NCBI RefSeq assembly: GCF_009834535.1
Contig: NC_045732.1
Coordinates: forward strand, 77,810,001-77,874,000
DNA: 64,000 nucleotides
Source of the DNA: Camelus ferus
Taxonomy: Eukaryota
Direction of reading: 5' to 3'
The position numbers and the translations under genes are program-made. Under the pieces are notes generated by a model, which saw only the letters and a program-made list of their open reading frames with translations, was not told the DNA's origin and did no database searches. Position 1 is the stretch's first letter. Each line of letters begins with the position of its first letter. Shown here piece after piece: positions 919 through 24,300 of the stretch.

Positions 919-1096
919 GGTTGCAGCCATCAGCCATCAGTGCCTGCCTCTCTGCCTGCCTGCCTCTCACCTGGGGAGGTCAAGGTGAACCCCGCAGAGA
1001 AAGCTCGTGGCTTCTCGAGAAGTGGGCACGATCAGGAACCATCCGTCCTGGTGGTTCTCACGCTGGGAGGTGCGTGGGAACACCTGGAAGGCTTCT

Positions 1097-1247
1097 NNNN
1101 NNNNNNNNNNNNNNNNNNNNNNNNNNNNNNNNNNNNNNNNNNNNNNNNNNNNNNNNNNNNNNNNNNNNNNNNNNNNNNNNNNNNNNNNNNNNNNNNNNNN
1201 NNNNNNNNNNNNNNNNNNNNNNNNNNNNNNNNNNNNNNNNNNNNNNN
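1097..1247. other. Assembly gap (151 N)
   Basis: Run of N. Other gaps: 15115-15245, 18372-18599, 23879-24025, 31404-31607, 35377-35476, 43081-43242, 50889-51036, 62830-63054. Confidence 1.
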
Positions 1248-4200: not shown

Positions 4201-7200
4201 CAGGCGCCCTTGCCTGGGGGAGCTCCTCCTAGTGGCCCGCTCTGTGGGTGGTGTGGGTGGGCACAGTCAGGGCAGCAGCCGGACCCCGTCCCCACCCAGC
4301 CTCCCGCCACCGCCAGGGCTGGTCCTTGGCCCTCACCCTCCCCGCGGGAGGGCCTGGGTGCCTTTCCCATTGAACACAGGACGTCTGTGCCTGGCCCGTC
4401 CTCACAGGTGTGCGGACCAAGGGCAGTCTCCCAACCCCACCCATCATTCAGTGGTTTCCTCAGCCCTGCTGCCCTGGCTGAGGCCTCGCTGGGCTCGTGG
4501 GGACCTTCCAGATACCCGTGGTAGAGGTGGACGAGGCCGGCCCGACCTCTGAGCAGCACCGCGTGGCCCTGCCTGCCGGGTAGCATCCTCCCTGGAGATG
4601 CCTGTGGCCTGAGGACGAGGCTGGTGTGGGAGCTGGCAGCAGCCGGGCCCTGGAGCGGGATGAGACACCCCGGGCAGCAGAGCGCCAGCACACAAACACG
4701 CGGTCCGCGTGGCCCGCGCCCAGCACTCCGCGTGCCTGCTGACCCTGACCTAGCGGCCACCTCCTTCCTGGGGGGTGGCTTCTTCTGGCTCCATCGGGGT
4801 TCCGGGATGGGGGTGGCCTCCCTCGAGCACCCAGCCCTGTGCCTTGGAGTTGGGCCAGGTCGCCCATGCTGGGGGGCCTTGCAGGAACCCCAGGTGTCTT
4901 CAGACTAATGTTGCCCTTGTTGAAATGCTGAGGCTCCCTCCCTGTCAGATGGGTGGCGGCTCCATCCTGAGTGGCTGCTGCTCCCCTTCCCCACCTGGGT
5001 GCCTCCCATCCTCCTGGAGGAACAGGCAGCAGGGAGGGTCAGGTGCAGAGGTGTGGCCAGAGCAGGGGTCGGGGCTGCTGTGGTTGGGGCAGTCAGCTCC
5101 GCCTTCCCCCTGTCCTGCCTGGCTTGGACTCCGACCAGACAGGACCTGCGGGACAGAGGTGGAGGCTGCTCCTGACCTGGGCGACCCGCCATCCCCTCCC
5201 CAGACTTAATAGGTGAGGTGGGGTTGCCTGGGGAGGGCATGTGGCTGGGTCCTCTCCCCGGCTCCTGGCATGTGTTGGCGAGCAGGGCTCGGGCGTGGGG
5301 CCTGTTGGGGCCGGGCCACCACCCCTGCTGGCTCTGGATGGGTGGCCCAGCCTGGACACCCTGTGTGTGAGCCCGGCTGAGGGCCTGGGCCTTGTGATTC
5401 CCTGTGTCCTCCTAGCAGTCCGGGTGTCCTCTGGGGGAGTTGCTCAGTGGGGCCGGGGCCCAGGCCATTCTCCCCCAGCAGGATGGGGTCCTGGTGCTCC
5501 TTTTCCTGGTGCCATCTGCCTGTCCTCCCCTAAAACCCCTCGCAGGGATGGTGCCCCAGTCTTGTTTCCTCCTGTCCCCTGCCTAGGCGGGCCTCAGGCT
5601 CAGGTCCGGTCTATCCTGTAGCCTCTGTCCTCTGGGTCCTGTTTCCCCCCAGGTTGGCATCTTTCCCCCCTTGCCGACCCATGGGCCTCATGGTTGCCTG
5701 GGCGTGATGTGGCATCTGGGAGGGGACAGGGACTCCTGGTTAGCTGGGCTCAGCTCTGGGGCCATTCTCCCACGAGGGTCCCCACCAGGCAGGGGCTTGG
5801 AAAGGATGGGAGGCGGGACTGTCTCCTCTTGGCAGACTGGCCCAGGGAGGGGGCAGGAGGCTCTGGGCGATTCATGGAAAGGAGGTGTGCCATGTGGGTG
5901 GCAGGTGGGCCGAGAGGAGGAGGGGGTGCCTGGGGGGGGAACCTCTATCCCCCCAGTGGTGCTAGACCTCTCTGTGCCTGGCTCTGCCTCCTCTCCAGCT
6001 GAGCAGCTTCTAGAAGCCTCCAGTGTGCCTGCCTCGCTCCCGTCTCAGCCCAGCAGGCTCCACAGAGAAGTGGTGGTTCAGGGGGCGGGGCCTGCCCTGG
6101 GAGGGGGAGGGTGGAGTCTCCAGGGACTGGCCCTTTGTGCAACAAACCAGCCTAGGAGAGTAGTAGTGCCATTGTCCTCTCCATTAGGCCCTTGGGGCCT
6201 GGAGTGGTTCATCCTCATAGAGCCAGAGGCTGTGCACCCCTTGGCCTGTCCTCTTGGATGGATGCCTCTGTAGTGCTGGCACCAGCTCAGTAGCCACCCT
6301 CTCTAGTTAAAGCAGCTGTCCCAACACAGAGTGGTGGTCAAGGCAGAGGGGGCCCTAGGCCTGCCCAGTATTGTCTGCCCCCTCCCCTGGATCTGAGGGT
6401 CTGGGGCAGAGGTCGAGGGGCTGGATTAGGAGCTAGGCTTCCTGGCTCCACCTGTGTCCCGCCCACAGCGTCCTCTTCTCTGCACTCCACCAGGGATGCA
6501 CTCAGCTTCTCGTGCAGAGGCCCAAGGGACTTGCTCCATTGCAAGGGCTGGCTGCTTGGGCTCCTCCCTGCCTGACAGCCGCTGCAACCCCCAGCCCGTG
6601 GCACCCCCACTGCAGGGGGCCCCTCAGAGCTCCTGTGGGAGGTAGTCTCAGAGTCCTGGAAAGCACTAGGTCGAGACCTCGAAATCTGGGGTCCCTCAGG
6701 GGCTCACGGAGCCCTCAAAAGCCTTTGGGTTGGGGTGCTCAGAGCAGTAGGGGGCACTTAGTGCCCTTATGGAGATCTGGAACCCTGGGAAGTGGGGCCC
6801 AGCCTGAAGGGGAGTCCTGGAGGGGGGCCAGAGCCTTTGGGAGCTATCAGAACTCTGGGAGGGGGTGGCTCAGCCCTGGGGCAGGAGGCTTGAAGCCCCT
6901 CAGGAGCCTGCAGTCACCTTCCCTTGGTGGGTGGTGATCAATGCATGTGGTTGCCCTTGGGGAATAAATGAAGAAAGGTGGAGACTGTCTCCTGGGTGGT
7001 AACTCTTTCCTTTCTTTCCTCTCTCAAGACACCACAATGGTTGCCAAGCACACCTAGCCTCCCCTTTCCCTGCTTTCCCTGCAACAGATGGAGGACTGAA
7101 GCCCGCAGAGGGCATTCCATCCAGAGGCCTCGGTCTCTCCCCTTCCTTGTGATGCCTCAAGCCCAGCTCTCCTTCCTCCTGTGCTGTCCCTTCTCTCTGC

Positions 7201-7299
7201 CTCAGCTACTCCCAAGTGTCAGCACATAAGCCTTACCATTTCTCTAGGCTTCACCTGACTCTTCCCAGACTCCTTGGGGCTCCAGCAGTCCCCGGTAGT

Positions 7300-7420
7300 G
7301 AGTGATTGTTGGGGACCATTCTCACAGGCTCAGTCCCTGCTCGTAACATACTTGATTTGGGATCAGTTGCTGAAACAAGATGTCTCACTGTGCCCCTCTG
7401 TAGTCCCCATGCACTGGCAA
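7300..7420. mobile_element. Degenerate MIR SINE fragment
   Basis: Resembles the MIR core by eye (ctcagtccctgctcgtaacatacttg...ctctgtagtccccatg); boundaries approximate. Confidence 0.4.
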
Positions 7421-8660
7421 CCTGATTGCTTGTTCTGCTCCTCCCCCAATGCAGGCTCACTGATCTTACCATCAGGCCCTGTTGTCACCAACGAGGAGGC
7501 AGCATCTCTGCCCATGCCCACCACCCACCATGAATCATCCAAGCCTCAGCTCTTGCACTGGGATGACAAGGGGCCTGGGGACTCCACGCCAGTTGGCTGG
7601 GTGCTGGGAGAGCCAGGTGGGAGTGGCTTGCAGAGGCTGTGGGAGTGGTGAGAAAATCTGAAGCAACTAAGTTCTTTCATTCTTTTCTGTATATATATGT
7701 ATCTTTTCTGTATATTTTAAATGCATAAAAAGGTGTTACTTTTAGGAAAACACATACATACCAAAAAAAAAGTGCAGGGACAGACTAGGGTGCAGCAAAA
7801 AAATGAGCAGGAGTGTTGGGTGGGAGGGTTCCAGCCCCTGCCCTGGCTGGAGCTCACCATGTGGCCCTGGACAGCCAAGTGCCTGCAAAGACTCAGGAGC
7901 CCACAGTGCACGTGCAGGTGAGAGGCCAGCCCTGCCATGTCCTATCTACCATCTGTAGCCAGGAGCCACCAGAGGTGAGGAACTGGTGTCAGGGCCCCAC
8001 CCAACGGGGAAGCCCTGGTGGAGCCAGCCTCTCTGCTTTTCAGCCCCCTGCTGGCGGTGTAGAGCCAGAGTGCACGGCCTCACATGGCGTCCTACACTGG
8101 GTTACCTCAGCACCTGCCGTTAAAGTTGTACCTAAACTTTGAAAATTAGGAAATACCCGTGGCAGAAAACCAGGAGGTAATTGAGAATAGCCAGGTGAGG
8201 GAATGGTTAACCCGAAGGTGATGGGGCATTTCCGGGTATTGGGAGCCTTCCCCTGTCATTAAACAATCAGCTTTCCAATAGAAATGGCCCACCAAGCAGA
8301 ACCCTTCCCATCTCCCTGCCCTGGGACACTGAGGTGGGCGTCTGCTTTTCCCAGTTAGGACATCCACAACTGACGTCGTCCATGCCGCCTTGCCTGCATT
8401 TCCGGGTGGGCTGTCCGTGGGCTGTAATTCTTAAGTAGTTACAAGAGCTTTGGTAACAAATCAGGAAATGGACCCTACAAGCAAAACACATATGTACCCA
8501 CGGGTAGCATGTGATCCCTACCCTTAACCGAAAAGAAAAAGGAAGAACAAAGCCAGATGTCAACTCTGGAGACCCAAGCCCCAGAGGCCCTGAGCAGGGG
8601 GCAGCCCAACCCCTCCCCACATTAAAGGGAAGAGCCCACATGTTAAAAATAAACGGTCTT

Positions 8661-8666
8661 TTTATT
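8661..8666 (-). terminator. EMD: EMD polyadenylation signal AATAAA
   Basis: TTTATT on + about 375 nt beyond the EMD stop codon. Confidence 0.75.
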
Positions 8667-9039
8667 GTGCGTTCATGAAAACAAAGTCAGGGTGGCCTTT
8701 GGTTAATCCCCCCCAATGAAGTGACAACAAATCATGCAATGACAACCACCATGTTCTCTCCAGGAGAAGGGTCTTGCCCTCCTAGGCCCTTAAGGGTCAG
8801 AGGCAAGCAGGGCCAGGAGGCTCCAGAGGAAGGCCCGCCCAGGCCCACCATGCTGCAGAGGGTCTGGTCCTGCTGCCTCCCTGGCAGGACAAGGCAGGAG
8901 AAGCAAACATTGCCCCTTTCCCAGGACCCCCAAGCTAGAACACAGAAAAGCCCCAACCCCCCTCCCCCAGCAAACACTGCTAAGGCAGTCAGCCAGGACT
9001 TCCAAGAGCAGCTGGCCCCAAAACCACGAAGCCAGACCC

Positions 9040-10858
9040 TCAGGGGTCTGCCCAGAAGGGGTTGCCATCCTCAGCCTGCATGGAGTAGTAAACAAAGAGC
9101 AGGAAGGCAGCGAAGACCAGGAACAGGAGCATCTGACCCCAGAGTGGGACCTGGCGCTCCTGACCCAGACCTGCCCCAGGGGCCTGCTTTTCGGGCCGGA
9201 TGGCACGGCGGGTGAGCCACGAAGGTGGGGGAGATGAAGATGAGGACACTGGAGAGGTAGAGGAGGAGGTGGGGTAATAGGACAGGCCCAGGGAGCTTCT
9301 GGAGACGTTGGAAACGGGGCGGTAGTGTGCGATGCTCTGGTAGGCACTGTCACGACCATACACGGGGCGCTCCCTGAGGCAAAGAGGAGAGTGGATAGGT
9401 CAGGAGGGCCTGAGCCCAGAACCAGCCCCAATCCCTGGCCCTCCCTACTACTCACCTATCCTTGCCTTCTTCTTCGGAAGAGAAAAGACTGTCATCGCGA
9501 ACCTACAGAAGTGAATCAGGGTAAAAAGATACTGCCTGGTGAGGTCAGCGTGGTCCTGTCACATCCCTTAATCCAAACTTCCCTGTCCAGCCTACTCTGA
9601 ATACTGCTTAAAAGCCGGGGCCTCGCCACCCTCCAGAAGCCTTCTCAGTTCCCGGCCCTATCTGTGGGGCCTTGCCACTTGCTCAGTGACTGTCCTGACT
9701 GCCTGCACCCTACTTTCTGCCCCAGGATTCTCAGAAAGAGCTCAAACCCAGATCCCAGACCAGAGTGTAGGGCATGTCCCAGGTCCTTTAGTCAGACAGT
9801 TGTGACAGCCCCGCAAAGAAAGGTCCTGACTAGGCAGGCAACTGCTGAGCCCACCTCTCCCTGGAGGCTTAGGAGCCACCATTTGCACCCAGTGCCCCCC
9901 CAGTGTATCCAAACCCAGCGATGACCCCCTCAGGTTGTACCCAAGTATAGGGGGTCCAATGGCCAGCTCACCTGGTGGTGGAAGGTGTCAGCATCTGAGA
10001 GTGAAGCGGAGGGCTGGCGGAAGCCCTTGGATGTGCCTACAGACTCAGGCTCTCCGTAAGTCCTGGTGCTCAAGTAACTCTCCTCGTAGTAGTCATCGTT
10101 GTAGCCTTGGGAAGGAGGGGCAGCGGTAGCAGAAGGGGCAGCGGTGTCCCCCGCCTGGCGCGATGGCCCTAATCTGGCGCCCACTTGGGGGCCTGTGACA
10201 TAATTTCTCCCCTCCAAGGCCACTGTAGGACCATGGGGGTTGAGGTGTCAGGTTCTTCCTGACACCGGGATCCCTGAAGGAGTGGAACGAGGGTGCCAGG
10301 GTGCCCACCCCACCCTGGCCTTACCCTTGCTCTGGTAAAGTAAAGCGTCCTCTTTCTTGGGCAGATCGTACATATCCGAGTCCATGGACGCCGCATCTAA
10401 GTCTGAATGGGGGAGGGGCCAGGACCATTTGCTCCAGGCTCCCCTCCCTCTTCCCCGTGCCCCTCCCAACCAGCGGCCCCACCACACCCGCGAGACTCCT
10501 TCCTCCCCGTCGCCCAAAGCCTGTCCCCGCAGGCGGCCAAGTGGAGCTCTGCGGCGGGGGCCTTACCCGAGAACCGATAGGAGAAAGGGGATGCGGACGA
10601 GTTCGGGGGCGAGAGCCTCCGCCTCTGGGTCTCAAACTCGAAGATTTTCTTTTCGTAGAGCTTGCGCGTGGAACCTGGCCAGACAGGGGGCGCAAGGCCG
10701 TCAGGGGCGCGGGCTGAGAGCCCGGGGCAGCGCGGGGAGGGGGCCCGCCCGCAGCCCGCCGCCCGCCGCCGCGTACCCACGACAGGCCCGTGCGGGATGT
10801 TGTACTGGCGCAGCACGGCGGCTAGCTCGGCGTCCGACAGGCCCGCGTAGTCGTCCAT
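9040..10858 (-). CDS. EMD: Emerin (LEM-domain inner nuclear membrane protein), 6 exons, 260 aa
   Basis: Coding exons 10858-10777, 10674-10567, 10402-10325, 10105-9972, 9502-9456, 9373-9040, all GT-AG; 783 nt in total. LEM domain [38 protein letters not shown]; C-terminal TM segment [24 protein letters not shown]; ends GNPFWADP*. Confidence 0.99.
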
Positions 10859-10974: not shown

Positions 10975-11499
10975 CGTCACCCCTGCGTCACGCTCGCGTC
11001 ACAGCCGCGGTCTCTGCGGGCCGCGCGCGCTGCGCGGGGCGGAGACAGGCCCGGAGAACCGCCCGCGCAGACTAGTCGAGCCACGGGAACGGGCCGGGCG
11101 GGGCTGGCCAGCCCAGACGTCACGGACGAACGGGATTGGCTGGAGGCGAAAGACGGGCGTAGAGTGCGTCAGCGGCAAAGCTGCGCAGACCAGTCCGGCC
11201 GTGGGAGCGGGCGGGGCTGCGCGCCTGGGAGAAGGGGCGGTGTCGGCGGGCCAAGCGTCGTCACACGCTAGCGCGTTCGGGCTAGACACGAGGAAGGGCG
11301 GGGCCTGCGCTCAAGGGGGAGGAGCGTAGACCCGTGGGGACGTGGGAGAGGGGCGGGGCCGGCGAGCCGAGGCGTCACCCGCTGGGACATTCGGGTGAGA
11401 AGTGAGGAAGTGAGGAGGGGCGGGGCCCGTAGCAGTGAAACCGGCATTAACTGGCTAGGACGTGGGAGCACTGGTCGTGCTCGCCCTCTGTGAGTGACG
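10975..11499 (-). promoter_or_regulatory. EMD: EMD CpG-island promoter with a cluster of CRE half-sites
   Basis: CGTCA(C) at 10975, 10986, 10997, 11118, 11167, 11259, 11373 and GTGACG at 11494; GC boxes; TATA-less. Confidence 0.75.
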
Positions 11500-12242
11500 T
11501 AGGCTCCGCTCAGTCCCCCCGCAGCCCTCGCGGTCCCCCTTCCTCCGAGATCCAGCGCTTGGGGGTCCCTGGCCGCGCCCAAGCCGGTCGCTCGGCAGCA
11601 GCATGAAGGGGCCCGATCTTAAGGGCAAGCCCTTGGAGAGCGCGGGTCCGGGCGAGGCGCTGCTGCCAGCGCTGTGCGCGCGTGCGCCACGCCAGCGGAG
11701 CCCGTGGCGCCCGGACCCCAGGCCGCCCCCCAGACTCCTTGCCCCAGCCGGCCTGCCCGCTCTGCACCGCCCTGGGCTGCGCACCTGCGCCCGCCGGTCC
11801 CCACCGCCTGCCTCCCTCCCAACCCGCTCCACCCAGGAGGAAATGGGGCACTGGGCCAGGAGGCCACAGGCGATCCAGGAGCAAGCAGCCCTGAAAGGGG
11901 CAGGGCGTGCCAATGGGCACTGGCAGAGGCCGCAGGGTGACGCATGCAGAGACAGCGAGTGTCCGTCTGACCCACCAGCAGTCCACCTGGGGCAGTAGGG
12001 GTTTCCTCTCCTGTCTGAATGGGCCCTGAGCCAGTGTGACCCAGGAGGCGGCCGGGCAGGGGTGGGGGGGGGTGTCTTCCAGACCCAGAGGGACCTGCGC
12101 AGTGGTTCCCTGAGGAACTGCTTGATGGGCTCTGTGCACCTGGGTCTGGGTGGGCTTCACTGTCACGTGGTGCAGAGGGGGCCCCCGGGACACAGGGGCC
12201 AGGGGACTGAAGGGGGCAGACCACCAAGGCCTGCTGAGGAGT
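11479..12242 (+). repeat. Inner inverted repeat, left arm (764 bp)
   Basis: Reverse complement of 17054-17829. Translations of the two arms are identical across the core (131-aa ORF 11603-11998 equals 17310-17705; the 227-aa ORF matches too); differences are confined to the ends. Confidence 0.98.
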
Positions 12243-13670
12243 CTGGACAGTCACTAGGAGTTGGTGAGGACCTTGAGCAGTGAAGAGCTGCCCCATGAAA
12301 CTGCGAAGGAGGTGACAATCACATTCTAAACAAAGCTAGATGATGGAGTGTGGGGCCAACTGAAGTGCGCCTCCCAGACCTGGGAGCCTGGGGAGGGGAG
12401 GCCCCGTCCTTTCCTCGTAGATGACAGCTGGTAACAGAAGTGAGGAGGGCTCTGGTCAGATCCAGGCAGGTTGGCCCAGCTGGTGAGGGTCACTGTGGAG
12501 GTTTGTTCATGGGGTGAAGAAGATGTAACCATACAGTTAGTGGTGAGAAGATAGGGCCCTGATTTGACTACACAGAGCCTCAGAAAATTTGCCCAAAAGT
12601 TGCAGGGTTTTCGAGTAAAGGTGAGGCCTACCATATCTCTGGAAGAGGACGAGGCGTGTGGGCCCCAAGACATGCAAGGCAGTACGAAAGTAGGGAGAGC
12701 CCTAGGCAGGCAGGGTCTTGCTGCTTATCTTTCAGAGCAGGAAGGGAGATGGTGTCAGGGCTCTGGGCTGCTCAGAGTCTGCCTCATGGAATTTTAAGTT
12801 TTGGCAAGATCCAATTCCCCAGCACCTCTCCAAGCCTTCTTCTGCAATGCTGGCCCCTGTCCCGGAGGCTGTCCTCCCCCATGCCACCCCTCCCCATACA
12901 GATCCAAGCTGTTTCCTTATGAGGTCAAAGAATTCTAAGTTTGCCTTCTCCCCTAGGAACACCCTGTCCCCCGGCACCTGCCTTGCCACTCTGCCTTTTA
13001 TCCCCTCCTCCTCCAGTCACCCCAGTATGAGGTCCCACCACCAGTGGCACCAGGAGCCTGACTTGTGATGGTCCCCTGTGCCCAAGCCCACCTGGAGACC
13101 AAGTCCAGGTGCACTGCAGGCAGACCCATCCCAGACCACCAGAAAGCAGGAGAGCCCTTGACTGTCAGAGCCCAGAGGCCCTTGGCACCACCCTTACCAC
13201 GATCACATAGTCGAGGAATTAGGGGCCCAGAGAGGGAGGAGACTTGTGCAAGGGCCCCGAGTGCAGCGATTCATTCATGGATTGTTCTCCCAGTTGGTAC
13301 CTAGTCCTGGGGTGATGATCTGGACAGTGTGGCCCAGAGGGGGTTCTGTGTCAGCAAATGGGCTATTGGGGGAAATCTAGGGCCTCAAGTGGAGTCTTCC
13401 TGGGAACAGGTGGGCAGAATTAAAGAAGAGGAGGCATTTCTCTGGAACTGCAGCGAGGGTGGAAAGGGATAGGAAGCCACTGATTCCTAGTCAAGAATAA
13501 GAAGACAGTTTCTCCTTTAAGGATGAGGAATGGGTTCTGAGCAGGATATTATATAACTTGTAATTCTAGCACTATCGAAAATTATAGGGAAAAATAATAT
13601 CAACAAGAATACATTCCTCAACATTCAGGTCCAAGGAGACAATTGTTCATTGAGCTGTTAATGTTTTCTT

Positions 13671-13805
13671 TTTCTTTCTTCCTTTTTTTTTGGGGGGGGT
13701 AATTAGGTTTATTTATCTATTCTAATACAGGTACTGGGGATTGAACCCAGGACCTTGTGCATGCTAGGCATGCACTCTACCACCAAGCTATACCCTCCCC
13801 TCTCA
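13671..13805 (-). mobile_element. Camelid-type tRNA-derived SINE (Vic-1-like) with 18-bp target-site duplication
   Basis: Minus-strand head GGGGAGGGTATAGCTTGGTGG..., B-box GGTTCAATCC and A-tail; TSD AGCTGTTAATGTTTTCTT at 13653-13670 and 13806-13823. Confidence 0.9.
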
Positions 13806-15245
13806 AGCTGTTAATGTTTTCTTAAAGATCAGAATCTTAATCCTTTGGTTCAATACAAAACTTAAGTTTTCTCTTCAAGGATGTTAAAAATCTTATAGGT
13901 TTTGCCTGCCAACAGAATGCTGTAAAACGTTGCTCAGATAGTAACAAAAGTCATAAGATGGTGAATATTGTGAAAATTAATGTGTAGGAGGTGGTCACAA
14001 TTAATATGTACCAGTGAGTGATTAGCTGACCAAAAGCCTCTCAAAGAATGCCTTGTGTTCCAAGCCTAGAACACACCAGTTTACCTTGGGACTATTGGCA
14101 TGGCTAGTTGGAGATTCAGCTTGCCTTGATTCTAGTGGTTTTCAGGAACTTTCAACACAAGGAGGAAAGGTCTTTAATTTATTACGATCTTTACTAGAGA
14201 ACAGCTGGTGCTTACAAACCTGCATTCCCTAGACCTGGAAGAAGTAGAGACCCAGAGATGCATGTGGGGAGCCTTGGCCAGGAGCTTTCTCCCTCCACCC
14301 TTTTTCTTTCTCTCCTTTAATGCAGTGGAATAGAATAGGAAATGTCAGAGTCCTTTTCAGGTAGCAAGGGAAAGGCTCATTTTGTGAACCACCTGTTTCA
14401 GTTACTTGTGTCACCCTGTGTGTGTGCACACAAGTACTGGCTCAGGATGTACAGTGTAGTTCTTATTGGGGTTTGCGGGCAAAAGGTTTAAGACACTGCT
14501 TTATGTGGCCTTCCCCAAGAAAGTGATACTTGCATTGAATACGAAGCTACCAGGAAATAGGCACATAGAAGAGGAAGAGGGAGCCTGGCAGTGCCAGGGT
14601 GTGGCTGTGCTCACCCAGTTCACAGACCCTTGGCTCTGTGGCTGCCCCACTACCACTGCCCACTCCCGGACTTAAGGACTGCACCTAACCGTGCTCCTGA
14701 GAATTCAGTCCGTCTCTGTTGCCCCCGCCCAGGCTTGGCACCCAGCGGGGGCCAAATCAGTGGCAGTCAGGATGCTAGCTCATCCCGGGTTTCAGGTCCC
14801 TGGTCCATGGTAGATTTTTGGCCGTAGGCGCTCAGTGAACACCTGCAACGGCCCGTTGCCCACCTGCACTCCAGACGGCAGACTCCGACTTGCCTGGCCA
14901 GCCCAGGCTTGAGGCAAAGGAAGGGAGTCATGACTATGGGCCACCTGGAGGAGGTGGCCTTTCCTGCAACAGGGGCCCTGCAGACCCTTAGGGCTCTTGA
15001 GGAGAGCACCCCCCTCGCCGGTCGGTGAGCTCATAGGGCGGGGGGCGTCGCCAGGCGGCCGGGGCGCTGGAGCTCGCGGCGCGCCCCCGCCCCCCCCGCC
15101 CCCGCCCCCGGCTCNNNNNNNNNNNNNNNNNNNNNNNNNNNNNNNNNNNNNNNNNNNNNNNNNNNNNNNNNNNNNNNNNNNNNNNNNNNNNNNNNNNNNN
15201 NNNNNNNNNNNNNNNNNNNNNNNNNNNNNNNNNNNNNNNNNNNNN

Positions 15246-15334
15246 GACGCCAGTGGAGCCCCGAGGCGCCCGGTGCGGGCTCACAGGCAAGCCAGGCGCC
15301 ACCCCGCGGTCGCCAGTCGTCCGCAGGACAGCAG
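15246..15334 (+). other. FLNA: FLNA non-coding exon 1 (3' part; the start lies in the gap 15115-15245)
   Basis: GGCGCCACCCCGCGGTC...GGACAGCAG matches the recalled human FLNA 5' UTR, followed by donor CAG|GTGAGG at 15334; within a CpG island with GC-box arrays. Confidence 0.85.
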
Positions 15335-16223
15335 GTGAGGCCTCCGCGGCCGGCTCCGAGCGGGATGGTCACGGAGCTGCTCGCATACCGAGGGCGGGGG
15401 TGGCGAAGTCCGGAGGCGAATCCTGAGAACTCAGGCGCGGGCGCGCACCCAGGCCGGGGCCAGGTGCAGCTGGGGTGCCTTCCCTTGGGGCCGACTTACC
15501 TGGTTTACCTGAAAATCTGTGTGTGCCTGGGAGTGTGGGAGCCCAAAGTCACGGGGGTCCCTGAGAGAGAGGGAGTCTGAGCGTTTGGCAGGACACAGGC
15601 TCTCCTGCACGCCGGTGAGCTGGCCGCTGCATGGCTATCTGGGAAGGAGGGGCCCAGAGAGCAGGACATTGTGTGGGCTGAGGGCGAGTGGCCACGTGGA
15701 AGGACAATTCACAGCCAGTATGCTTCCTGGGAGGGCGACAGTGGGTTCCTCGCTGGCACCAGTCCTCTGGGTACCAACTGCTTTGGGCACAGGGAGTTGG
15801 CTGCCGGGCTGCTGTGCTCTGTGGGAGGTCAGGCAGGGGTGTGGCCCGCACAGGAAGCAGGGGCTCCTCCAAGAGGCCAGATTCCCAGGCTGGGTCCTGT
15901 CCCAGGTTGGCTCAGAGCTGGATGTTCACTGCCAGCCAGGATGCAAGCAGCAACATCCCCAGATTCCCATGCCACCTGGGTCCAGGAGAAGTAGGTGAAA
16001 TCCGATGGGAGAGCCACCAGTATGTGCTCCAGGGTGCAGGTCAAGATGGGAACTCAGGACTTAAGTGCCCTCACCTGCCACCTGGACTTGCCTTAGTGGC
16101 CCATCCTGCCATTCTTCGACTTTCTTCACCAGCTGAATCGCCCCTGTGGGAGGGCCTGGCCTGGGGTCTGAGGACTGGGGGTGGGGTGGGAGGCGGAGTG
16201 TATCTAACATCCAAGAATCTACT

Positions 16224-16233
16224 CCAAATAAGG
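16224..16233. promoter_or_regulatory. CArG box (SRF site) in FLNA intron 1
   Basis: CCAAATAAGG fits CC(A/T)6GG; a CArG-like CCAAATAGGG at 16367-16376 and AP-1 TGACTCA at 16453-16459 lie nearby. Confidence 0.65.
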
Positions 16234-16910
16234 GAAAATATGAAAGAGCTGGATTTTGGCTTCCAGGGACTGCTGGATCTGGGGGCTTTGGGATGGGGCG
16301 CCATCTGGTGGTGATATGACGTCCCCTAGGGACAAGAACCTTCTACATCCCCATCCTTTATCACCCCCAAATAGGGAAAACCTAGGGCTGGAAGCCAGGA
16401 TGCCCAGATTCGGTCCCCTTTTCTGCTGGAGTTGGCTACTGGTCACTTACTCTGACTCAGTGTCCCTGCTCTCTGAAGATTAAGGAGTGAACACAGATGA
16501 CCCAATTGGATGGCACTTATAAAAGTGAAAATCAGTTCTCAATGGAACTCTCTCCTTGGGAACTTGCTTTCCAGTGGGACAGAGGAAGCAGGACAAGTCT
16601 CATCTCCTCTCGAATGGGGCCTGGTAGGGAGCAGTCCCCCCTCTAAAGGTTTCCCTCCCACCTACACTCCAGATCCCAGACACTGTGGTGTGGAATTTTG
16701 TGCAGGTGTGCAGGTCAGGAGAGGAGAGTGTACAGGTGAGCCTCAGACTGAAAAATGTCATTTGGAACCCCTACCACCACCATTGGTGAGGAAAAACCAG
16801 TGGGGTGACAGGCAGCCCCTAAGTGAGCATGCAGGAGGGCAGGGGAGACGCTGGCTGGGACTACAGCCCCACTGTGGGTGATGTAGACACCGCAGGTTGT
16901 GCGGCGTCAA

Positions 16911-16920
16911 CCATATTTGG
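16911..16920. promoter_or_regulatory. CArG box (SRF site) in FLNA intron 1
   Basis: CCATATTTGG fits CC(A/T)6GG. Confidence 0.65.
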
Positions 16921-17053
16921 GCATGACATGCCAGCTGACCCAGGGCCTCCTCTCCCACTGCTCTTTAGCAGATAATTTAGTTAGTACTAGTCTGCAGCTC
17001 AATCTAAGAATCAAGCAGGAGGGGCAGAGACATGCTCCTCAGACACAGGCCAC

Positions 17054-17829
17054 ACTCCTCAGCAGGCCTTGGCAGCCGTCATGGTGGTTTGCCCCCTTCA
17101 GTCCCCTAGCCCCTGTGTCCCGGGGGCCCCCTCTGCACCACGTGACAGTGAAGCCCACCCAGACCCAGGTGCACAGAGCCCATCAAGCAGTTCCTCAGGG
17201 AACCACTGCGCAGGTCCCTCTGGGTCTGGAAGACACCCCCCCCCACCCCTGCCCGGCCGCCTCCTGGGTCACACTGGCTCAGGGCCCATTCAGACAGGAG
17301 AGGAAACCCCTACTGCCCCAGGTGGACTGCTGGTGGGTCAGACGGACACTCGCTGTCTCTGCATGCGTCACCCTGCGGCCTCTGCCAGTGCCCATTGGCA
17401 CGCCCTGCCCCTTTCAGGGCTGCTTGCTCCTGGATCGCCTGTGGCCTCCTGGCCCAGTGCCCCATTTCCTCCTGGGTGGAGCGGGTTGGGAGGGAGGCAG
17501 GCGGTGGGGACCGGCGGGCGCAGGTGCGCAGCCCAGGGCGGTGCAGAGCGGGCAGGCCGGCTGGGGCAAGGAGTCTGGGGGGCGGCCTGGGGTCCGGGCG
17601 CCACGGGCTCCGCTGGCGTGGCGCACGCGCGCACAGCGCTGGCAGCAGCGCCTCGCCCGGACCCGCGCTCTCCAAGGGCTTGCCCTTAAGATCGGGCCCC
17701 TTCATGCTGCTGCCGAGCGACCGGCTTGGGCGCGGCCAGGGACCCCCAAGCGCTGGATCTCGGAGGAAGGGGGACCGCGAGGGCTGCGGGGGATCTGAGC
17801 GGAGCCTACGTCACTCACAGAGGGCGAGC
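17054..17829 (-). repeat. Inner inverted repeat, right arm (776 bp), inside FLNA intron 1
   Basis: Reverse complement of 11479-12242, with a 12-bp insertion (CAGCCGTCATGG) and two substitutions near the inner end, and GGGGGATCTG vs GGGGGGACTG near the outer end. Confidence 0.98.
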
Positions 17830-18307
17830 CACCCCATCCCCCGCAGGAGCCGTGGGGAAGGAAAGTCCCTTGTAAGGTGTGCCCGCTGGAGGCCAAGTGG
17901 TCCAGTGCCAGACACAGCTCAGCCTTTCCTCGCTGCAGCGTTTCCTGCAGCGCAGGCGCGAGACCGCAGGGCTTGGGCGCAATCTTGCTTGCTTGGGGCC
18001 CAGCGACCCTTCCTGGAGCCTGGGGGTCGGGTCAAAACCATCCGGGCGGAGGGACTCAGGGGGGCATTCCAACGGGCGGGGTGGGGCGGGGCGGGTGCGG
18101 CCCCGAAGCCCCACCCGCAGCCCCGCCTCACGGCAGTTCCGCCTCCTAGTCCCGCCCCCTGCCCGCATTTAAAGGGCTCGCTCTTTCCGTAGCGCAACCT
18201 CTGCTGTCTGCATCGTCCTGGGCTCGCTGAGGTGCCTGCGACTTTAATTAAAGGGCCGTCCCCTCGCCTAGGCTGCAGCACCGCCCCTCGGCTCCTCGCG
18301 CCTCAAA

Positions 18308-21300
18308 ATGAGTAGCTCCCACTCCCGGGCGGGCCAGAGCGCTGCGGGCGCGGCTCCGGGCAGCGGTACCGNNNNNNNNNNNNNNNNNNNNNNNNNNNNN
18401 NNNNNNNNNNNNNNNNNNNNNNNNNNNNNNNNNNNNNNNNNNNNNNNNNNNNNNNNNNNNNNNNNNNNNNNNNNNNNNNNNNNNNNNNNNNNNNNNNNNN
18501 NNNNNNNNNNNNNNNNNNNNNNNNNNNNNNNNNNNNNNNNNNNNNNNNNNNNNNNNNNNNNNNNNNNNNNNNNNNNNNNNNNNNNNNNNNNNNNNNNNNC
18601 CTTCCGCCAGATGCAGCTCGAGAACGTGTCGGTGGCGCTCGAGTTCCTAGACCGCGAGAGCATCAAGCTCGTGTCAATCGGTGAGGGCGCGGGCCTCCCC
18701 GTGGCGCGGGGAGGGTGAGGGAGGGGGACTCCGTGCGTCTTCCCATCTCCCGGGGGCTGACCCCTGGCAGACACCCTCTTAAGCTGCGGCGCTGACCCGG
18801 AGGCTCCAGGGGCCGCCCAGATGCATGTGGGCCTGGAGAACAAAGGCTCGCTGGCCAGCGGTGCGTGCGGACCGCTAGGCGCCCCGCCCGCCTGTCCCGG
18901 CTGGCCCACGCCCAGGCTGAGCTCACATCCTCCGCAGGCCGCGCCCCCGCCGCTGCGGCCGCGGTGGGAGAGGGCCTAGGGGGGCGGGCACTGGCCAAGC
19001 TCTGGCCCTGCGCCCAATGCCCCATCTCTAACGAGGCGGAGGCCAGGGCTCTGCACCCCCTAAAGCAGTTTGGAGAGGGCAGTCTGGCCTTCAGGCACCC
19101 CTGTGGTTCCTAAACAGGGGATGGAGCTTGTGGGTTCCATTATCTAGGCCCCCCACCCCCGCTAAAGATGGGGGGCCTTAATTTAGATCTCCCCCTCAGA
19201 ACTAGGGGGCCAGAGAGGACCATAGCTATTGAAAGACAAGATGGGTCTGTGCGCTGGCTAGTGAAGGGAGCTGGCTTGTAGCCTACTTAGACACCAAGTT
19301 ACTGTTGATTTCTGGCCAAACTCTTCCATGTAGGACTTGCCTTCCTGCATCTAGAATGCAGGAGTTGGTTGGGAGGTACTCCAGCATGTGCTGGGCTCAC
19401 TGCCGGCCCAATGTCCGTGTCACCGGGCTAGTGAGGCTGGAATTGACCAGACCTACTGCATCCCGGGCACTTCTTAAGATGGGAGCCGCTCAGGGACCAA
19501 CACCAGAACTGGTGACTTGGGGAGGGGGCTATGCAACAGGGAGGGAAGGGGCAAGAGCTGTTTGTTTTCAGAGGCCTTTCAGATGTCCCTTTGGCCCTGG
19601 CATGGTCCATGCTGAGCCTGGGAAGGTGAGGGACCGAGACTCAGGTTCCCCCAACCACTCAGGGCAGGTCTCAAGGGCCCCACCACTTTCTTTGGAATGC
19701 ACATCGTTGAGGCCGAGGAGGCCCACCCCTCAGTCCCAGCCTCAGTCTAGCCAAGCTGAGTCATCTCTGAGCCTTGGGGGGGGGCAACCGGATGTGGGGA
19801 GGCGGGCCACACCCCAGTTGTCTGGGGGGGGGTCTCGTCCTCCCCCCTCCCTTCTCCTCTTGTGAGCTGGCTGGAGCAGGCCTAGTTCCCAGAGCTTTGC
19901 CATATAAGGCAAAAAAATGTTGGAAAGCGGCAGTGATTAGGGGAGGGAGGGGTCAGGCTGCCCCGGGGGCTGGGGAAAGGAGGTGGGATGGGGCGGGGCC
20001 ATCCAGCCCGTCATTCTCTCAACCCGGGGCCCCGTCCTTCCCTCTCTCTTTTGTGAGGTGGACAGGGAGGGCCTCGGCCAGTCTCCTTTGGAACAGGGGG
20101 AGGGCCCAGCCCAACCTACCAGGGCTGATGAGCTTGGCCTTGTGTGTCCTCTCATGGGTCACAGTGGGCCTCAGGCCTCCTGAGGTCTCCTGTACAAGAC
20201 TCAGGATCCTGGGGGTGAGAGCCTGGTGGGAGGCCCCAGCGGGTCCTGTGCTCTTGGTCTTCTCTGAACCTTCCAGTCACCCCTAGCCTGAAGTCCCCTC
20301 TCCACCCTCCCTTGCTTGCCATCGGGGGACAGTGTTAGGTAGTGGTGTGCGACCAGGAGCAACCCCAGTCCAGGAACATGCTTTGAGTAGCATGGCGCTG
20401 GTCCTCAAACTGCTGCCTGCTGGATTCAGAGGCTGCCACATTGATGGACCTTTCCGAGGCACTCATCCCCTTCTTCCCATTCCCAAGTTGACCCACTCAA
20501 CAAGTATTTTCTCCTGATTATTGGGGGTAGAGGGTGGAGCATGCTGGCAGGAATTCCAAAGATGAGTTGCCCTCTCCCATTCTTGGAGCACCACCCCCAG
20601 CCCCCAATCTCAGGAGGAGGCTGAGACCCAGAAGGGCCTTGGGTGGGGCTTAGAGCACAGAGAGGTTGCTATAGTGATGGGGTGCAGGGTGCCCGCCCTA
20701 ACCACTTCCCCTGTGGTGAGCTTGGTGGCCACCAGCTCTCAGCCCAGTGGCCCGTTAGGTGGCGAGAACAGGCAGCAGCCGAGCACACTCTGCTGAGGCA
20801 GCGGGACTTGGGGACCCCACCCATGACTTCTGCCACCCAAACTCCCGAGCTGAGCCCTGGGCGCCCAACCCAGGCTCACTGGCTTTGCTCCTCCTCCTCC
20901 TCCTCCTTGGGCTGGGTGAGGGGCCCCTGGAATGTGTCCTGCCCATCATCCTGGCTGGCAGGCTATCCCTGCTGGGCCCCAGTGAGTCAGGGCCCTGCAG
21001 CCCAACCACTGGTTCCTTGGGGCTCCCAGCCCCTCCCTTGCACCAAGGCCTGCTGCCCAACTCCCAGCTGGGCTCTGGGGGGAGGGGGAGCACTGAGGAA
21101 GTGGTGGGGGGTGGGGCTCGCACCCTCCACCCAAAGGGTCCTTGCTCAACACCTCTGCTTTCCCTGCCGTCCACCCACTCGCCCTGGGGCAGCAGTTGTA
21201 TTTCCCAACCGCCCCACCCGCCTGCCTTCCCCTTCCTCAGCGCCAGGTCAGGGGCTCTGGCATCGAGGCCTGCTGGGGCCTGGCTGCTCCTCCTGCCCAT

Positions 21301-24300
21301 TCTCTGGAGACCCCTGGAGATGGGTGGTGGGCTCATGTGTGGGCAGCTGTGGCGTGCTCATCGGACTCACTCTCCAGAGCCACCATCTTTGGCGAAGGGG
21401 ACTCCTCCAGAGACCTCCCCTGGCCCTGTCTGCAGCCAAGCTCTGTCGCTTGTCCTTCCTCTAGGGCCCCACAGCCTCGGCTTCCGGCAACACCCCCTCA
21501 CTGTGCTGTATCATCACCATGTGCCCATGGGTGTTTTCCCTTCGAACCTGCTTCACGCCTTTGCAGGGGCCCTGGGCAGAGAGGGCCCCACCCCACCCTG
21601 CGAAGGCCTCTCTCTCCTCCCTGGGGCCTGCTGTGCTCCACACAGCAGTGCCTGGGAGTGGCCTGCCACCCTGTGTGTGCATGTACACATGTGCACAGGG
21701 ACGCACACGGAGGCCCCTGCCTGCCTAGCACTGCCACTCCTTTCCGTCACAGACAGCAAGGCCATCGTGGACGGGAACCTGAAGCTGATCTTGGGCCTCA
21801 TCTGGACCCTGATCCTGCACTACTCCATCTCCATGCCCATGTGGGATGAAGAGGAGGATGAGGAGGCCAAGAAACAGACACCCAAGCAGAGGCTTCTGGG
21901 ATGGATCCAGAACAAGCTTCCACAGCTGCCCATCACAAACTTCAGCCGGGACTGGCAGAGCGGCAGGGCCCTGGGTGCCCTGGTGGACAGCTGTGCCCCA
22001 GGTGAGGGGCGTGGGCGTGCTGGGGCAGACCGGATGGCCCACCAGGAAGTTCTGTGGGCCCCCGACTCACCACCTTCCTCGTGCCTCAGGCCTGTGTCCT
22101 GACTGGGACTCCTGGGACGCCAGCAAGCCTGTGAACAATGCACGGGAAGCCATGCAGCAGGCTGATGACTGGCTGGGCATCCCTCAGGTACACCCCTACT
22201 TGACCACTCGGGGCCAACCAGGGGCCGAGATCCCGGTGGGGGGCGGTGGCACGCCCCAGGAACCTGAGGCTTAGAGGCTAAATGGCCCCTGTCTTCTGCC
22301 CATGGCAGGTGATCACTCCTGAGGAGATCGTGGACCCCAATGTGGATGAGCACTCCGTCATGACCTACCTATCCCAGTTCCCCAAGGCCAAGCTGAAGCC
22401 AGGGGCTCCCCTGCGGCCCAAACTGAACCCGAAGAAAGCCCGAGCCTACGGGCCAGGTGAGGGAGCCAGGCAGCAGTGGGTGCTCCTGGGCGATGCCCTC
22501 CTCCCCGCGGGTCAGTGTCCTCTCTAAAGTTGAGTCTTGAGTCACGTGGCAGCAAGGTTATTAAATGCCCCCCAAGAGTCAGGCAGGAGTGGGTTGAGGG
22601 AGGAAGGACCCATCCGCCTTACTGCGGTGGAGATGAAACCCAGCCCAGGGCGTCATACAGGAGTGAGGGCCCAGGCAAACACGGGGCACGTTCCAGAAAA
22701 CGGGCCCAGGCCTGTCCCACAGCAGGAACGCAGCTGGGACCGAAGGCTCTGTGCGCTGGGGTTTAAGCCGAACTGACTCGCGCGCGCAAAGCGTGCCTGC
22801 TAGGGCTGCGCTGGGGAGGGGGCGGCGCTCACAGCCTGCGTGGGCCTTTCGCGCCCTCCCCCGGCAGGCATCGAGCCCACAGGCAACATGGTGAAGAAGC
22901 GGGCAGAGTTCACTGTGGAGACTAGAAGCGCCGGCCAGGGAGAGGTGCTGGTGTACGTGGAGGACCCGGCTGGACACCAGGAGGAGGTAGGGCCGGCGGC
23001 ATGTGGGGCAGGCGCCACTGTGCCTTCGCTGGCAGGGGCCACTCTCAGCCAGAGCTCACGGGCTCCTTCCCACCCTAGGCCAAGGTGACCGCCAATAATG
23101 ACAAGAACCGTACCTTCTCTGTCTGGTATGTCCCCGAGGTGACGGGGACTCACAAGGTGAGCCCTCAGGCCAAGGGGAAGCTGGTGGCGAGGGCAGCGGC
23201 TGTAGGGCCCCACCCCGCCCTCACGTCCTGCCCCTCCTGCGAACAGGTCACTGTGCTCTTTGCCGGCCAGCACATTGCCAAGAGCCCCTTCGAGGTGTAC
23301 GTGGACAAGTCCCAGGGTGATGCCAGCAAAGTGACTGCCCAGGGCCCTGGCCTGGAGCCCAGCGGCAACATCGCCAACAAGACCACCTACTTTGAGATCT
23401 TCACGGCAGGTGACGGGAGGGTACTGAGGCTGCAAGGTCTGGGGGTGGGGCTGCTGGGGCCTGGAGGCTCTGGGAGCTGAGATGGTACCTTACGGTAGGC
23501 GCTGGCACGGGTGAGGTGGAGGTCGTGATCCAGGACCCGGCTGGACAGAAGGGTACCGTGGTGCCTCAGCTGGAGGCCCGGGGCGACAGCACATATCGCT
23601 GCAGTTACCAGCCCACCATGGAGGGTGTCCACACGGTGCATGTCACCTTCGCTGGCGTGCCCATCCCTCGCAGCCCCTACACTGTCACTGTTGGCCAAGG
23701 TAGGCCAGTCCTGGCTGTCACATGCTGGGTCATTGCAGCCCAGGCCTCCCTTAGGAGGGAGGCAGCCGGGGCAGGTCCCTCTCCATCCAGCCCCTGCCCC
23801 ATCTCCCTGGGTTGTCTGTGCTTCCACTGTCTGGGCGATGTACTCTCTTTCTTCCCCTGCTGGGGCCCCTCCTCCTCTNNNNNNNNNNNNNNNNNNNNNN
23901 NNNNNNNNNNNNNNNNNNNNNNNNNNNNNNNNNNNNNNNNNNNNNNNNNNNNNNNNNNNNNNNNNNNNNNNNNNNNNNNNNNNNNNNNNNNNNNNNNNNN
24001 NNNNNNNNNNNNNNNNNNNNNNNNNGGGCTGGGCTGGGGATGGGGGACAGATGCAGATGGAGCAGGTGGGAGGAGGCCTGCCATGTCTTGGCCTCGGCCA
24101 CAGGTTTTAGGGTCACAGTCCGTTCTGGTTCTTTCTTGCGCATCCTTCCCCACTCTCTGGCCTGATGGTCCAGCCACGTGGGAGGCAAGGGAGGGGTTGC
24201 CTAGCTCCAGCTCCTAGCAGCTCAGCTGGCTCTCTGCTCACAGCTTGTAACCCAGGTGCCTGCCGTGCTGTCGGCCGGGGCCTCCAACCCAAGGGCGTGC

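What the first reader, a model, noticed from the sequence alone, without database searches (positions are those of the whole stretch)
11479..17829. Candidate invertible promoter cassette: near-perfect inverted repeat brackets the FLNA promoter and exon 1
Seen in sequence: 764-bp and 776-bp arms in inverted orientation with a 4811-bp spacer (12243-17053). The left arm is upstream of EMD, the right arm is inside FLNA intron 1, and the spacer holds the FLNA CpG promoter, non-coding exon 1 (donor 15334) and CArG boxes. Inference: recombination between the arms would flip the spacer without touching either CDS. Exon 1 would move to ~13962 pointing at EMD (about 3.1 kb from the EMD ATG, versus 3.0 kb from the FLNA ATG now). 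FLNA would be left with only the GC-box/TTTAAA segment (~18070-18175) before exon 2. That would be a promoter-swap switch nested inside the known large FLNA-EMD inversion. I do not know of a description of this inner repeat and could not check the literature.
Basis: partly seen in the sequence, partly recalled or inferred. Interest (0 to 1): 0.9.

Follow-up and report, generated by a model that had tools for sequence, protein, structure and literature searches.

The report
Ancient inverted repeat around FLNA promoter
The near-perfect inverted repeat around the filamin A (FLNA) upstream promoter in this camel X-chromosome window is real. It dates back at least to the common ancestor of placental mammals and is kept identical by copy-correction between its two arms. 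Every genome I could compare carries the enclosed segment in the same orientation, so nothing shows that it works as a flip switch.

Summary
The arms lie at 11479-12242 and 17054-17829, with a 684-nt identical core. They bracket 4.8 kb holding the FLNA distal promoter, exon 1 and two CArG boxes.

The window is Camelus ferus chrX. The public record has no N at 15115-15245 and the spacing is identical, so that N run is a mask, not a gap.

The repeat is not an assembly artefact. Both arms occur at the same places in two dromedary assemblies.

Orthologous arm pairs also occur in warthog, right whale, cat and Asian elephant. Within a species the arms are 97-99.5% identical, but only 68-80% identical between species. 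Arms pair by species with 100% support, and an AU test rejects grouping by side (p=5e-41). This means one old duplication homogenised by arm-to-arm gene conversion.

Each arm has a ~150-nt core conserved from camel to elephant.

In all seven full assemblies the spacer has the same orientation. The "invertible promoter cassette" is therefore a geometric possibility without evidence.

I found no paper describing this inner repeat. Two other first-reader notes of this scan cover the same stretch.

The parts
11479..12242 (+). EMD-side (left) arm of the inner inverted repeat, 764 nt. Its outer end is 621 nt upstream of the EMD ATG.
17054..17829 (-). FLNA-side (right) arm, 776 nt, the reverse complement of the left arm. 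It lies in FLNA intron 1, with its outer end 479 nt upstream of the FLNA ATG.
11516..12199 (.). 684-nt stretch with no difference between the arms (mirror 17109-17792). All arm-specific differences lie outside it, near the arm ends.
11801..11960 (.). Conserved core of the arm (mirror about 17348-17507). 64% of its columns are invariant across camel, warthog, whale, cat and elephant, against 26-31% for the rest of the arm. It includes the nearly invariant 30-mer at 11836-11865.
12243..17053 (.). 4811-nt spacer. It holds the FLNA distal promoter, non-coding exon 1, the 5' part of intron 1 and several conserved non-coding blocks (for example 12760-13009 and 16160-16334).
15115..15245 (.). N run. 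It is a deliberate mask over continuous sequence, not an assembly gap. Its letters were not inspected.
   Evidence: L005 has no N and the same 160-nt spacing
15246..15334 (+). Visible 3' part of FLNA non-coding exon 1. The donor CAG|GTGAGG is conserved in five lineages.
16224..16233 (+). CArG box CCAAATAAGG, inside a block that is up to 100% invariant from camel to elephant.
16911..16920 (+). Second conserved CArG box, CCATATTTGG.
13671..13805 (-). Camelid-specific tRNA-derived SINE. It is present in the same orientation in C. ferus and C. dromedarius, and the orthologous position is unaligned in warthog.
18060..18307 (+). FLNA proximal GC-box/TTTAAA promoter (TTTAAA at 18168-18173) and the start of exon 2. 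It lies outside the repeat and is conserved from camel to elephant.
10856..10858 (-). EMD start codon.

Best explanation
This is an old small inverted duplication, present since at least the last common ancestor of placental mammals. One copy lies about 0.6 kb upstream of the EMD start codon. The other lies about 0.5 kb upstream of FLNA exon 2. Together they bracket the FLNA distal promoter, exon 1 and the intron-1 SRF-type (CArG) enhancers.

Within each lineage the two copies are repeatedly homogenised by intrachromosomal, non-crossover gene conversion (concerted evolution). That is why they are 97-99.5% identical within a species while differing by 20-32% between species.

The crossover outcome of the same recombination would invert the 4.8-kb spacer. 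No assembly examined shows this, so it is either rare or selected against. It is not a programmed switch.

What is shown:
- the repeat is real;
- it occupies orthologous positions in five lineages;
- the arms evolve in concert;
- the spacer orientation is constant;
- each arm has a conserved ~150-nt core.

What is inferred:
- gene conversion is the homogenising mechanism;
- the conserved core is a cis-regulatory element used upstream of both EMD and the FLNA proximal promoter (about 40% confidence);
- the inverted state is disfavoured.
For: The repeat and its anatomy are established.

The window is C. ferus chrX. Both arms sit at identical positions in two independent C. dromedarius assemblies. 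At each site the arms are 100% identical between the two species, including the arm-specific variants, while the flanks differ.

Orthologous arm pairs exist in four more lineages:
- warthog, 730 nt, 99.5% identical;
- right whale, about 740-815 nt, 97.8% identical excluding gaps;
- cat, 760 nt, 97.5% identical;
- elephant, 540 nt, 97.2% identical.
The flanks are collinear with camel, and the outer ends lie 475-503 nt from the FLNA ATG and 613-644 nt from the EMD ATG in all Laurasiatherians examined.

In the ML tree the two arms pair by species with 100/100 support in five lineages. The AU test rejects the tree in which the EMD-side arms form one clade (delta lnL 1405, p=5e-41).

The differences between arms cluster at the arm ends in camel and warthog.

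The conserved core stands out in the arm alignment and in the conservation profile.

The spacer orientation is the same in every full locus.
Against: Each assembly represents a single haplotype.

All four junction sequences are identical in both orientations. Only molecules longer than an arm can tell orientation, so assemblies built from short reads are weak evidence. The old C. ferus scaffolds (L001, L002) are uninformative, and the build methods of the window's own assembly and CamDro3 are recalled from memory, not checked.

The elephant repeat is shorter and has different ends, so a partly independent history cannot be excluded there. In reindeer and slow loris only the EMD-side copy fell within the 10-kb flank. 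Human, rodents and marsupials were not examined.

Outside the core, the arms evolve about as fast as their flanks. Conversion alone, without selection, could therefore maintain them. No function of the core was tested.
Confidence: 0.8

Rival explanations
1. This is the first reader's idea: an invertible promoter cassette. NAHR between the arms flips the spacer in some individuals or tissues. The FLNA distal promoter and exon 1 would then point at EMD, and FLNA would run from its proximal promoter.
For: The arms share 684 nt of perfect identity, which is enough for homologous recombination, and they demonstrably recombine. FLNA has a conserved second promoter outside the repeat, so an inversion need not be lethal. 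The outer FLNA-EMD repeats toggle in humans at about 6e-5 per generation (bioRxiv 10.1101/2021.12.20.472354).
Against: The spacer orientation is the same in all seven full assemblies from six species spanning about 100 million years. The outer inversion, by contrast, toggled at least 10 times in 16 lineages (cited). There is no recombinase mechanism for regulated switching in mammals. I have no read or RNA evidence either way.
Confidence: 0.1
2. Assembly artefact: a false inverted duplication in a draft assembly.
For: The window contains N runs. The old short-read C. ferus scaffolds break in or near the arms (L001 ends inside the right arm, and an N run covers half of the left arm).
Against: The N runs are masks, since the source record has none. 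Both arms, with four distinct flanks, occur in two independent dromedary assemblies. The orthologous pair occurs in warthog, whale, cat and elephant chromosome-level assemblies.
Confidence: 0.01
3. Independent recent duplications: each lineage made its own inverted copy recently, so within-species identity reflects young age rather than conversion.
For: Within-species identity is high. The elephant arms have different ends from the Laurasiatherian arms.
Against: This requires at least five separate duplications of the same segment into the same target position and orientation. The outer and inner boundaries coincide to within tens of nucleotides in camel, warthog, whale and cat.
Confidence: 0.04
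4. Purely neutral persistence: the repeat has no function, and frequent conversion between two nearby copies is enough to keep them alike indefinitely. The conserved core would then reflect constraint on only one copy, or none.
For: Outside the core, the arms diverge between species about as fast as the neighbouring intergenic DNA. The arms are more GC-rich than the spacer (0.68-0.75 versus 0.55-0.59), as GC-biased conversion would predict.
Against: A ~150-nt core, including a 30-mer almost invariant from camel to elephant and loris, is as conserved as FLNA exon 1. The distances from the arms to the two start codons are conserved.
Confidence: 0.3

Closest known systems
The large inverted repeats flanking FLNA-EMD on Xq28 (Small et al. 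1997; Caceres et al. 2007; human palindrome P24 in Jackson et al. 2021, PMC8327919)
   Same: Same locus. Both are inverted repeats with high arm-to-arm identity found in many placental mammals and evolving by arm-to-arm recombination.
   Different: The known repeats are about 11 kb in human, lie outside both genes, invert about 38-48 kb and have toggled repeatedly. Their sequence is not orthologous in all species. The repeat here is 0.5-0.8 kb, lies between EMD and FLNA exon 2, is orthologous from camel to elephant, and shows one orientation only. I could not read Caceres 2007, so I cannot rule out that it mentions the inner repeat.
F8 intron-1 inversion repeats int1h-1/int1h-2 on Xq28 (about 1 kb; Bagnall et al. 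2002; from memory, not checked here)
   Same: A roughly 1-kb near-identical inverted repeat with one copy in intron 1 of an Xq28 gene. Recombination between the copies separates the promoter and exon 1 from the rest of the gene.
   Different: The F8 copies are about 140 kb apart and the inversion is a known pathogenic allele. Here the copies are 4.8 kb apart, no inversion has been seen, and FLNA has a second promoter that would remain in place.
Primate X- and Y-chromosome palindromes maintained by arm-to-arm gene conversion (PMC8327919)
   Same: Concerted evolution of inverted arms, conservation across species, and a unique spacer.
   Different: Those arms are at least 8 kb long, usually carry testis-expressed gene families, and are conserved over tens rather than about 100 million years. 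Here the arms are sub-kilobase, non-coding and promoter-proximal.
Bacterial invertible promoters (fimS, hin)
   Same: A promoter bracketed by inverted repeats.
   Different: Those use 9-30 bp repeats and a dedicated site-specific recombinase, and both orientations coexist in a population. None of this is seen or expected here.

Membership tests
Concertedly evolving inverted repeat / palindrome | Two arms in inverted orientation with high identity and a unique spacer | tested here: met
Concertedly evolving inverted repeat / palindrome | Arms are more similar within a species than orthologous arms are between species | tested here: met
   Tree with 100/100 support in five lineages; AU test p=5e-41
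Concertedly evolving inverted repeat / palindrome | Orthologous position in several species | tested here: met
   Collinear flanks and conserved distances to the EMD and FLNA start codons
Concertedly evolving inverted repeat / palindrome | Arm length of 8 kb or more (the usual operational definition of X/Y palindromes) | tested here: not met
   Arms are 540-815 nt
NAHR-mediated polymorphic or toggling inversion (HsInv0389 type) | Inverted repeats with several hundred nt of uninterrupted identity | tested here: met
   684-nt identical core
NAHR-mediated polymorphic or toggling inversion (HsInv0389 type) | Both orientations observed among species | tested here: not met
   One orientation in seven full assemblies of six species
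NAHR-mediated polymorphic or toggling inversion (HsInv0389 type) | Both orientations observed among individuals of a species | not testable with these tools
All listed DNA runs are kept as k-mer contigs that cannot span an arm.
Programmed invertible promoter (phase-variation switch) | Promoter inside the invertible segment | tested here: met
   Conserved exon-1 donor and upstream CpG-rich block. The transcription start site itself is not shown.
Programmed invertible promoter (phase-variation switch) | Dedicated site-specific recombinase acting on short repeats | not tested
   None is known in mammals. The arms are long homologous repeats, not short recombinase sites.
Assembly artefact (false inverted duplication) | Seen in one assembly only, or bounded by true gaps | tested here: not met
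   Present in independent assemblies of six species; the N runs are masks

The most novel reading that the evidence does not exclude
The two arms are a selected pair of identical cis-regulatory or boundary elements. One copy sits upstream of the EMD promoter and one upstream of the FLNA proximal promoter. They frame the FLNA distal promoter and SRF-enhancer module in all placental mammals, humans included. Rare crossovers between them would create cryptic promoter-inversion alleles of FLNA/EMD that exome and short-read sequencing cannot see.
Probability: 0.15. Interest if true: 0.8.

Novelty: new member of a known kind. Interest (0 to 1): 0.55.

Why it matters
FLNA and EMD are X-linked disease genes. 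Their locus is the textbook case of an inversion that has recurred many times through large flanking repeats.

A second, much smaller repeat lies inside that locus. It has been kept near-identical for about 100 million years, yet shows no inversion in any genome compared. This makes a natural contrast. It shows that sub-kilobase repeats can evolve in concert over very long times, and it suggests that inversion of the FLNA distal promoter is disfavoured.

If the repeat is also present in humans, which I did not test, it is a candidate substrate for structural alleles that separate the FLNA upstream promoter from the gene. Standard sequencing would miss such alleles. The conserved 150-nt core present in two copies is a defined element that can be tested for regulatory or insulator activity.

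Tried and rejected
I have no depth, junction, orientation or RNA-splice data, and I did not resend.

2. The look-up of sequencing runs listed many camel runs from four coded organisms holding 0.91-0.97 of the words. All DNA runs are kept as contigs, which cannot span a 0.76-kb repeat, so they say nothing about orientation.

3. Several emerin look-ups failed. Isoform X2 (P0007) and the Balaenoptera protein (P0180) are not on record.

4. The short Logan and ENA contigs L006-L008 come from unidentified species and were uninformative. L007 and L008 stop about 100 nt into where the arm should begin. L006 shows no hit to the arm or its flank.

5. In reindeer (L010) and slow loris (L014) the FLNA-side site lies beyond the 10-kb flank.

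6. I scanned metagenome contigs with the conserved core. A degenerate 28-mer gave no hits. A 20-mer gave 9 hits, none related to the locus.

7. Rfam found nothing in the arms.

8. By-eye comparison of the core with CTCF, REST, NF-kB and NFI consensus sequences gave no convincing match. There are three conserved CACCTG E-boxes, and a CCAAT box conserved in only some species. I ran no matrix scan.

9. Six literature searches found nothing on an inner FLNA-EMD repeat. Caceres 2007 and Clapham 2012 are not held.

10. Ongoing conversion since the ferus/dromedarius split cannot be shown. Zero differences between the species across both arms, against about 2.6 expected from the spacer divergence, is not significant (my arithmetic).
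Full report
**1. Observation**

The repeat finder reports one long inverted repeat in the whole 64-kb window: 11479-12226 against 17082-17829, 748 nt and 99% complementary.

The arms differ only at four places: 11514-11515 (TC versus AT), 12200, 12219, and a 12-nt indel after 12223. The stretch 11516-12199 (684 nt) is identical in both arms.

The surrounding anatomy also holds.
- The EMD start codon is at 10858 on the minus strand. It was confirmed as emerin by protein search.
- The FLNA start codon is at 18308.
- A consensus splice donor has its last exon base at 15334.
- CArG boxes lie at 16224 and 16911.
- A tRNA-derived SINE lies at 13726-13797.

**2. The N run, tested first**

Looking up the camel emerin protein (P0168) returned the NCBI record from which the window was cut: L005, Camelus ferus GCA_009834535.1, chrX. 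It is 100% identical to the window over every piece I compared and has no N in the 21.8 kb held. The anchors at window 15100 and 15260 are 160 nt apart in both.

The run 15115-15245 is therefore a mask over continuous sequence. I did not read its letters. One dromedary assembly has the same spacing and the other is 9 nt shorter.

The run 18372-18599 lies inside FLNA coding exon 2. It is 228 nt long, and the reading frame stays open across it.

**3. Not an artefact**

Both arms sit at the same places in two independent C. dromedarius assemblies (L003 and L004), each with its own flanks. At each site the arm is 100% identical between C. ferus and dromedary L004, including the arm-specific variants. 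The flanks differ by 0.06-2.2%. The repeat and its few arm-specific differences therefore predate the split between these two camel species.

The 2013 short-read C. ferus scaffolds break in or next to the arms, as expected for a real repeat.

**4. The repeat is ancient and evolves in concert**

I fetched the 10 kb upstream of EMD from other mammals through their emerin proteins. Self-comparison of these loci shows an inverted pair at the orthologous places in four more lineages.

| Species | Locus | Arm coordinates | Length | Arm-to-arm identity |
|---|---|---|---|---|
| Warthog | L009 | 2021-2750 / 8628-9357 | 730 nt | 99.5% |
| Right whale | L011 | 2151-2965 / 8630-9367 | about 740-815 nt | 97.8% excluding one large indel |
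| Cat | L012 | 2666-3425 / 8611-9371 | 760 nt | 97.5% |
| Asian elephant | L013 | 1802-2341 / 8463-9002 | 540 nt | 97.2% |

These arms are homologous to the camel arms at only 68-80% identity.

In camel, warthog, whale and cat the outer arm ends lie 475-503 nt from the FLNA ATG and 613-644 nt from the EMD ATG. The inner boundary on the EMD side coincides within about 15 nt.

A maximum-likelihood tree pairs the two arms of each lineage with 100/100 support. An AU test rejects the tree that groups arms by side (delta lnL 1405, p=5e-41).

The simplest reading is a single duplication before the split between Afrotheria and Boreoeutheria, followed by recurrent arm-to-arm gene conversion. The alternative is five independent duplications of the same segment into the same place, which is far less likely.

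In camel and warthog all differences between arms lie near the arm ends, the pattern expected when conversion tracts rarely reach the edges. Comparison with the outgroups shows that each camel arm carries derived changes. For example, the 12-nt gap is a deletion in the EMD-side arm.

**5. What is in the arms and the spacer**

The alignment of all arms and a five-species conservation profile from the EMD ATG to the FLNA ATG give a consistent picture.
- Most of the arm evolves at the background rate, with 26-31% of columns invariant.
- A central core, 11801-11960 (mirror about 17348-17507), has 64% invariant columns, the same as FLNA exon 1 (62%).
- The core includes a 30-mer (11836-11865) that is almost unchanged from camel to elephant and loris.
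- Three CACCTG E-boxes are conserved, at 11783, 11984 and 12137.
- Rfam finds no RNA family in the arms.

The spacer holds several strongly conserved blocks:
- 12760-13009;
- the promoter and exon-1 region;
- the CArG box at 16224, inside a stretch that is 100% invariant;
- the CArG box at 16911.

Outside the repeat, the GC-box/TTTAAA segment just upstream of exon 2 is conserved in all five lineages. This fits the report that mouse Flna uses two promoters, one in a CpG island and one 3.4 kb upstream (PMC2661365).

**6. Orientation**

In every full locus the pieces lie in the same order and on the same strand as in the window: left flank, arm, spacer-left, spacer-middle, spacer-right, arm, right flank. 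This holds for C. ferus, two C. dromedarius assemblies, warthog, whale, cat and elephant.

The four junction sequences are identical in both orientations, so only molecules longer than an arm are informative. From memory, the whale, elephant, cat, warthog and newer dromedary assemblies are long-read based. If so, their orientation is reliable for the haplotype that was assembled.

The outer FLNA-EMD inversion toggled at least 10 times in 16 lineages and about 6e-5 per generation in humans. The inner spacer is unflipped in all six species.

The other half, individuals and RNA chimeras, could not be tested. All DNA runs on offer were k-mer contigs.

**7. Mechanism and rivals**

My best explanation, at confidence 0.8, is an ancient small inverted duplication kept alike by non-crossover gene conversion. 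The crossover product (inversion) is rare or selected against, because it would turn the distal promoter, exon 1 and the CArG enhancers away from FLNA and towards EMD.

Whether the arms are kept by selection is open. The conserved core and conserved geometry suggest that they are. The background divergence of the rest of the arm, and its higher GC content (0.68-0.75 against 0.55-0.59 for the spacer), would also fit conversion alone.

The other readings rank as follows:
- low-frequency germline inversion polymorphism: possible, about 0.1;
- a regulated switch: very unlikely in a mammal;
- assembly artefact: excluded.

**8. Comparison with what is known, and novelty**

The nearest known cases are:
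- the large FLNA-EMD flanking repeats;
- primate X palindromes (PMC8327919);
- as a model of the predicted consequence, the F8 intron-1 repeats (from memory).

This repeat works like those, through arm-to-arm recombination. It differs from them in four ways: it is sub-kilobase, promoter-proximal, orthologous across Eutheria, and not observed inverted.

The large repeats themselves are not visible within this window. "Nested inside the known inversion" is therefore not shown for the camel.

Six full-text searches found no description of the inner repeat. The key 2007 paper is not held, so prior mention cannot be excluded.

Two other first-reader notes of this scan cover the same stretch. One reads it as gene conversion, the other as a shared upstream module. 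My cross-species data support the first and leave the second open.

Noticed in passing
window 18372-18599 and the other N runs (1097-1247, 23879-24025, 31404-31607, ...): The N runs look like deliberate masks, not gaps. The run at 18372-18599 lies inside FLNA coding exon 2, is exactly 76 codons long, and the frame stays open across it. The source record has no N in the 21.8 kb fetched.
   Followed up: partly
window 12760-13009: A roughly 250-nt non-coding block in the EMD-FLNA intergenic spacer with 60-82% of columns invariant from camel to elephant. The read laying filter tripped inside it (12871-12937). Its function is unknown.
   Followed up: no
window 16160-16334: The block around the CArG box CCAAATAAGG is up to 100% invariant across camel, warthog, whale, cat and elephant. 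It is a strong candidate for an SRF enhancer in FLNA intron 1.
   Followed up: partly
window 1-9000 and 42000-64000: No large inverted repeat flanks FLNA-EMD within this window; only SINE-sized matches appear. If that is right, the 3' end of FLNA faces the RPL10/DNASE1L1 side, opposite to my memory of the human reference orientation. I did not verify this.
   Followed up: no
L001 and L002 (old C. ferus assembly GCA_000311805.2): EMD appears on two scaffolds. One ends 288 nt into the FLNA-side arm, and the other ends near the FLNA promoter. Both have a 1.1-kb N run over the outer half of the EMD-side arm and the EMD promoter. L001 also lacks about 490 nt around the FLNA promoter.
   Followed up: partly
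L010 (reindeer, GCA_949782905.1) 1-7100: The 7 kb beyond the left part of the spacer shows no match to the FLNA promoter, intron 1, the second arm or exon 2. The interval is either much expanded or rearranged in this assembly.
   Followed up: no
L011 (right whale) arms: The FLNA-side arm carries an expanded (GCA)n tract and the EMD-side arm a roughly 70-nt deletion. This lineage has the lowest arm identity once gaps are counted (87.7% in the BLAST alignment), possibly a repeat escaping conversion.
   Followed up: no
protein P0062 and cluster members: Camels carry a second 'emerin-like' gene on another chromosome-scale contig (80.5 Mb in dromedary). It is 81% identical to emerin isoform X2 and is probably a retrocopy.
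   Followed up: no
L007 and L008 (Logan contigs, unidentified species): Two identical 3.2-kb contigs carrying EMD end about 100 nt into the position where the arm should begin. A k-mer assembler would stop there at a repeat, which hints that this species has the repeat too.
   Followed up: no
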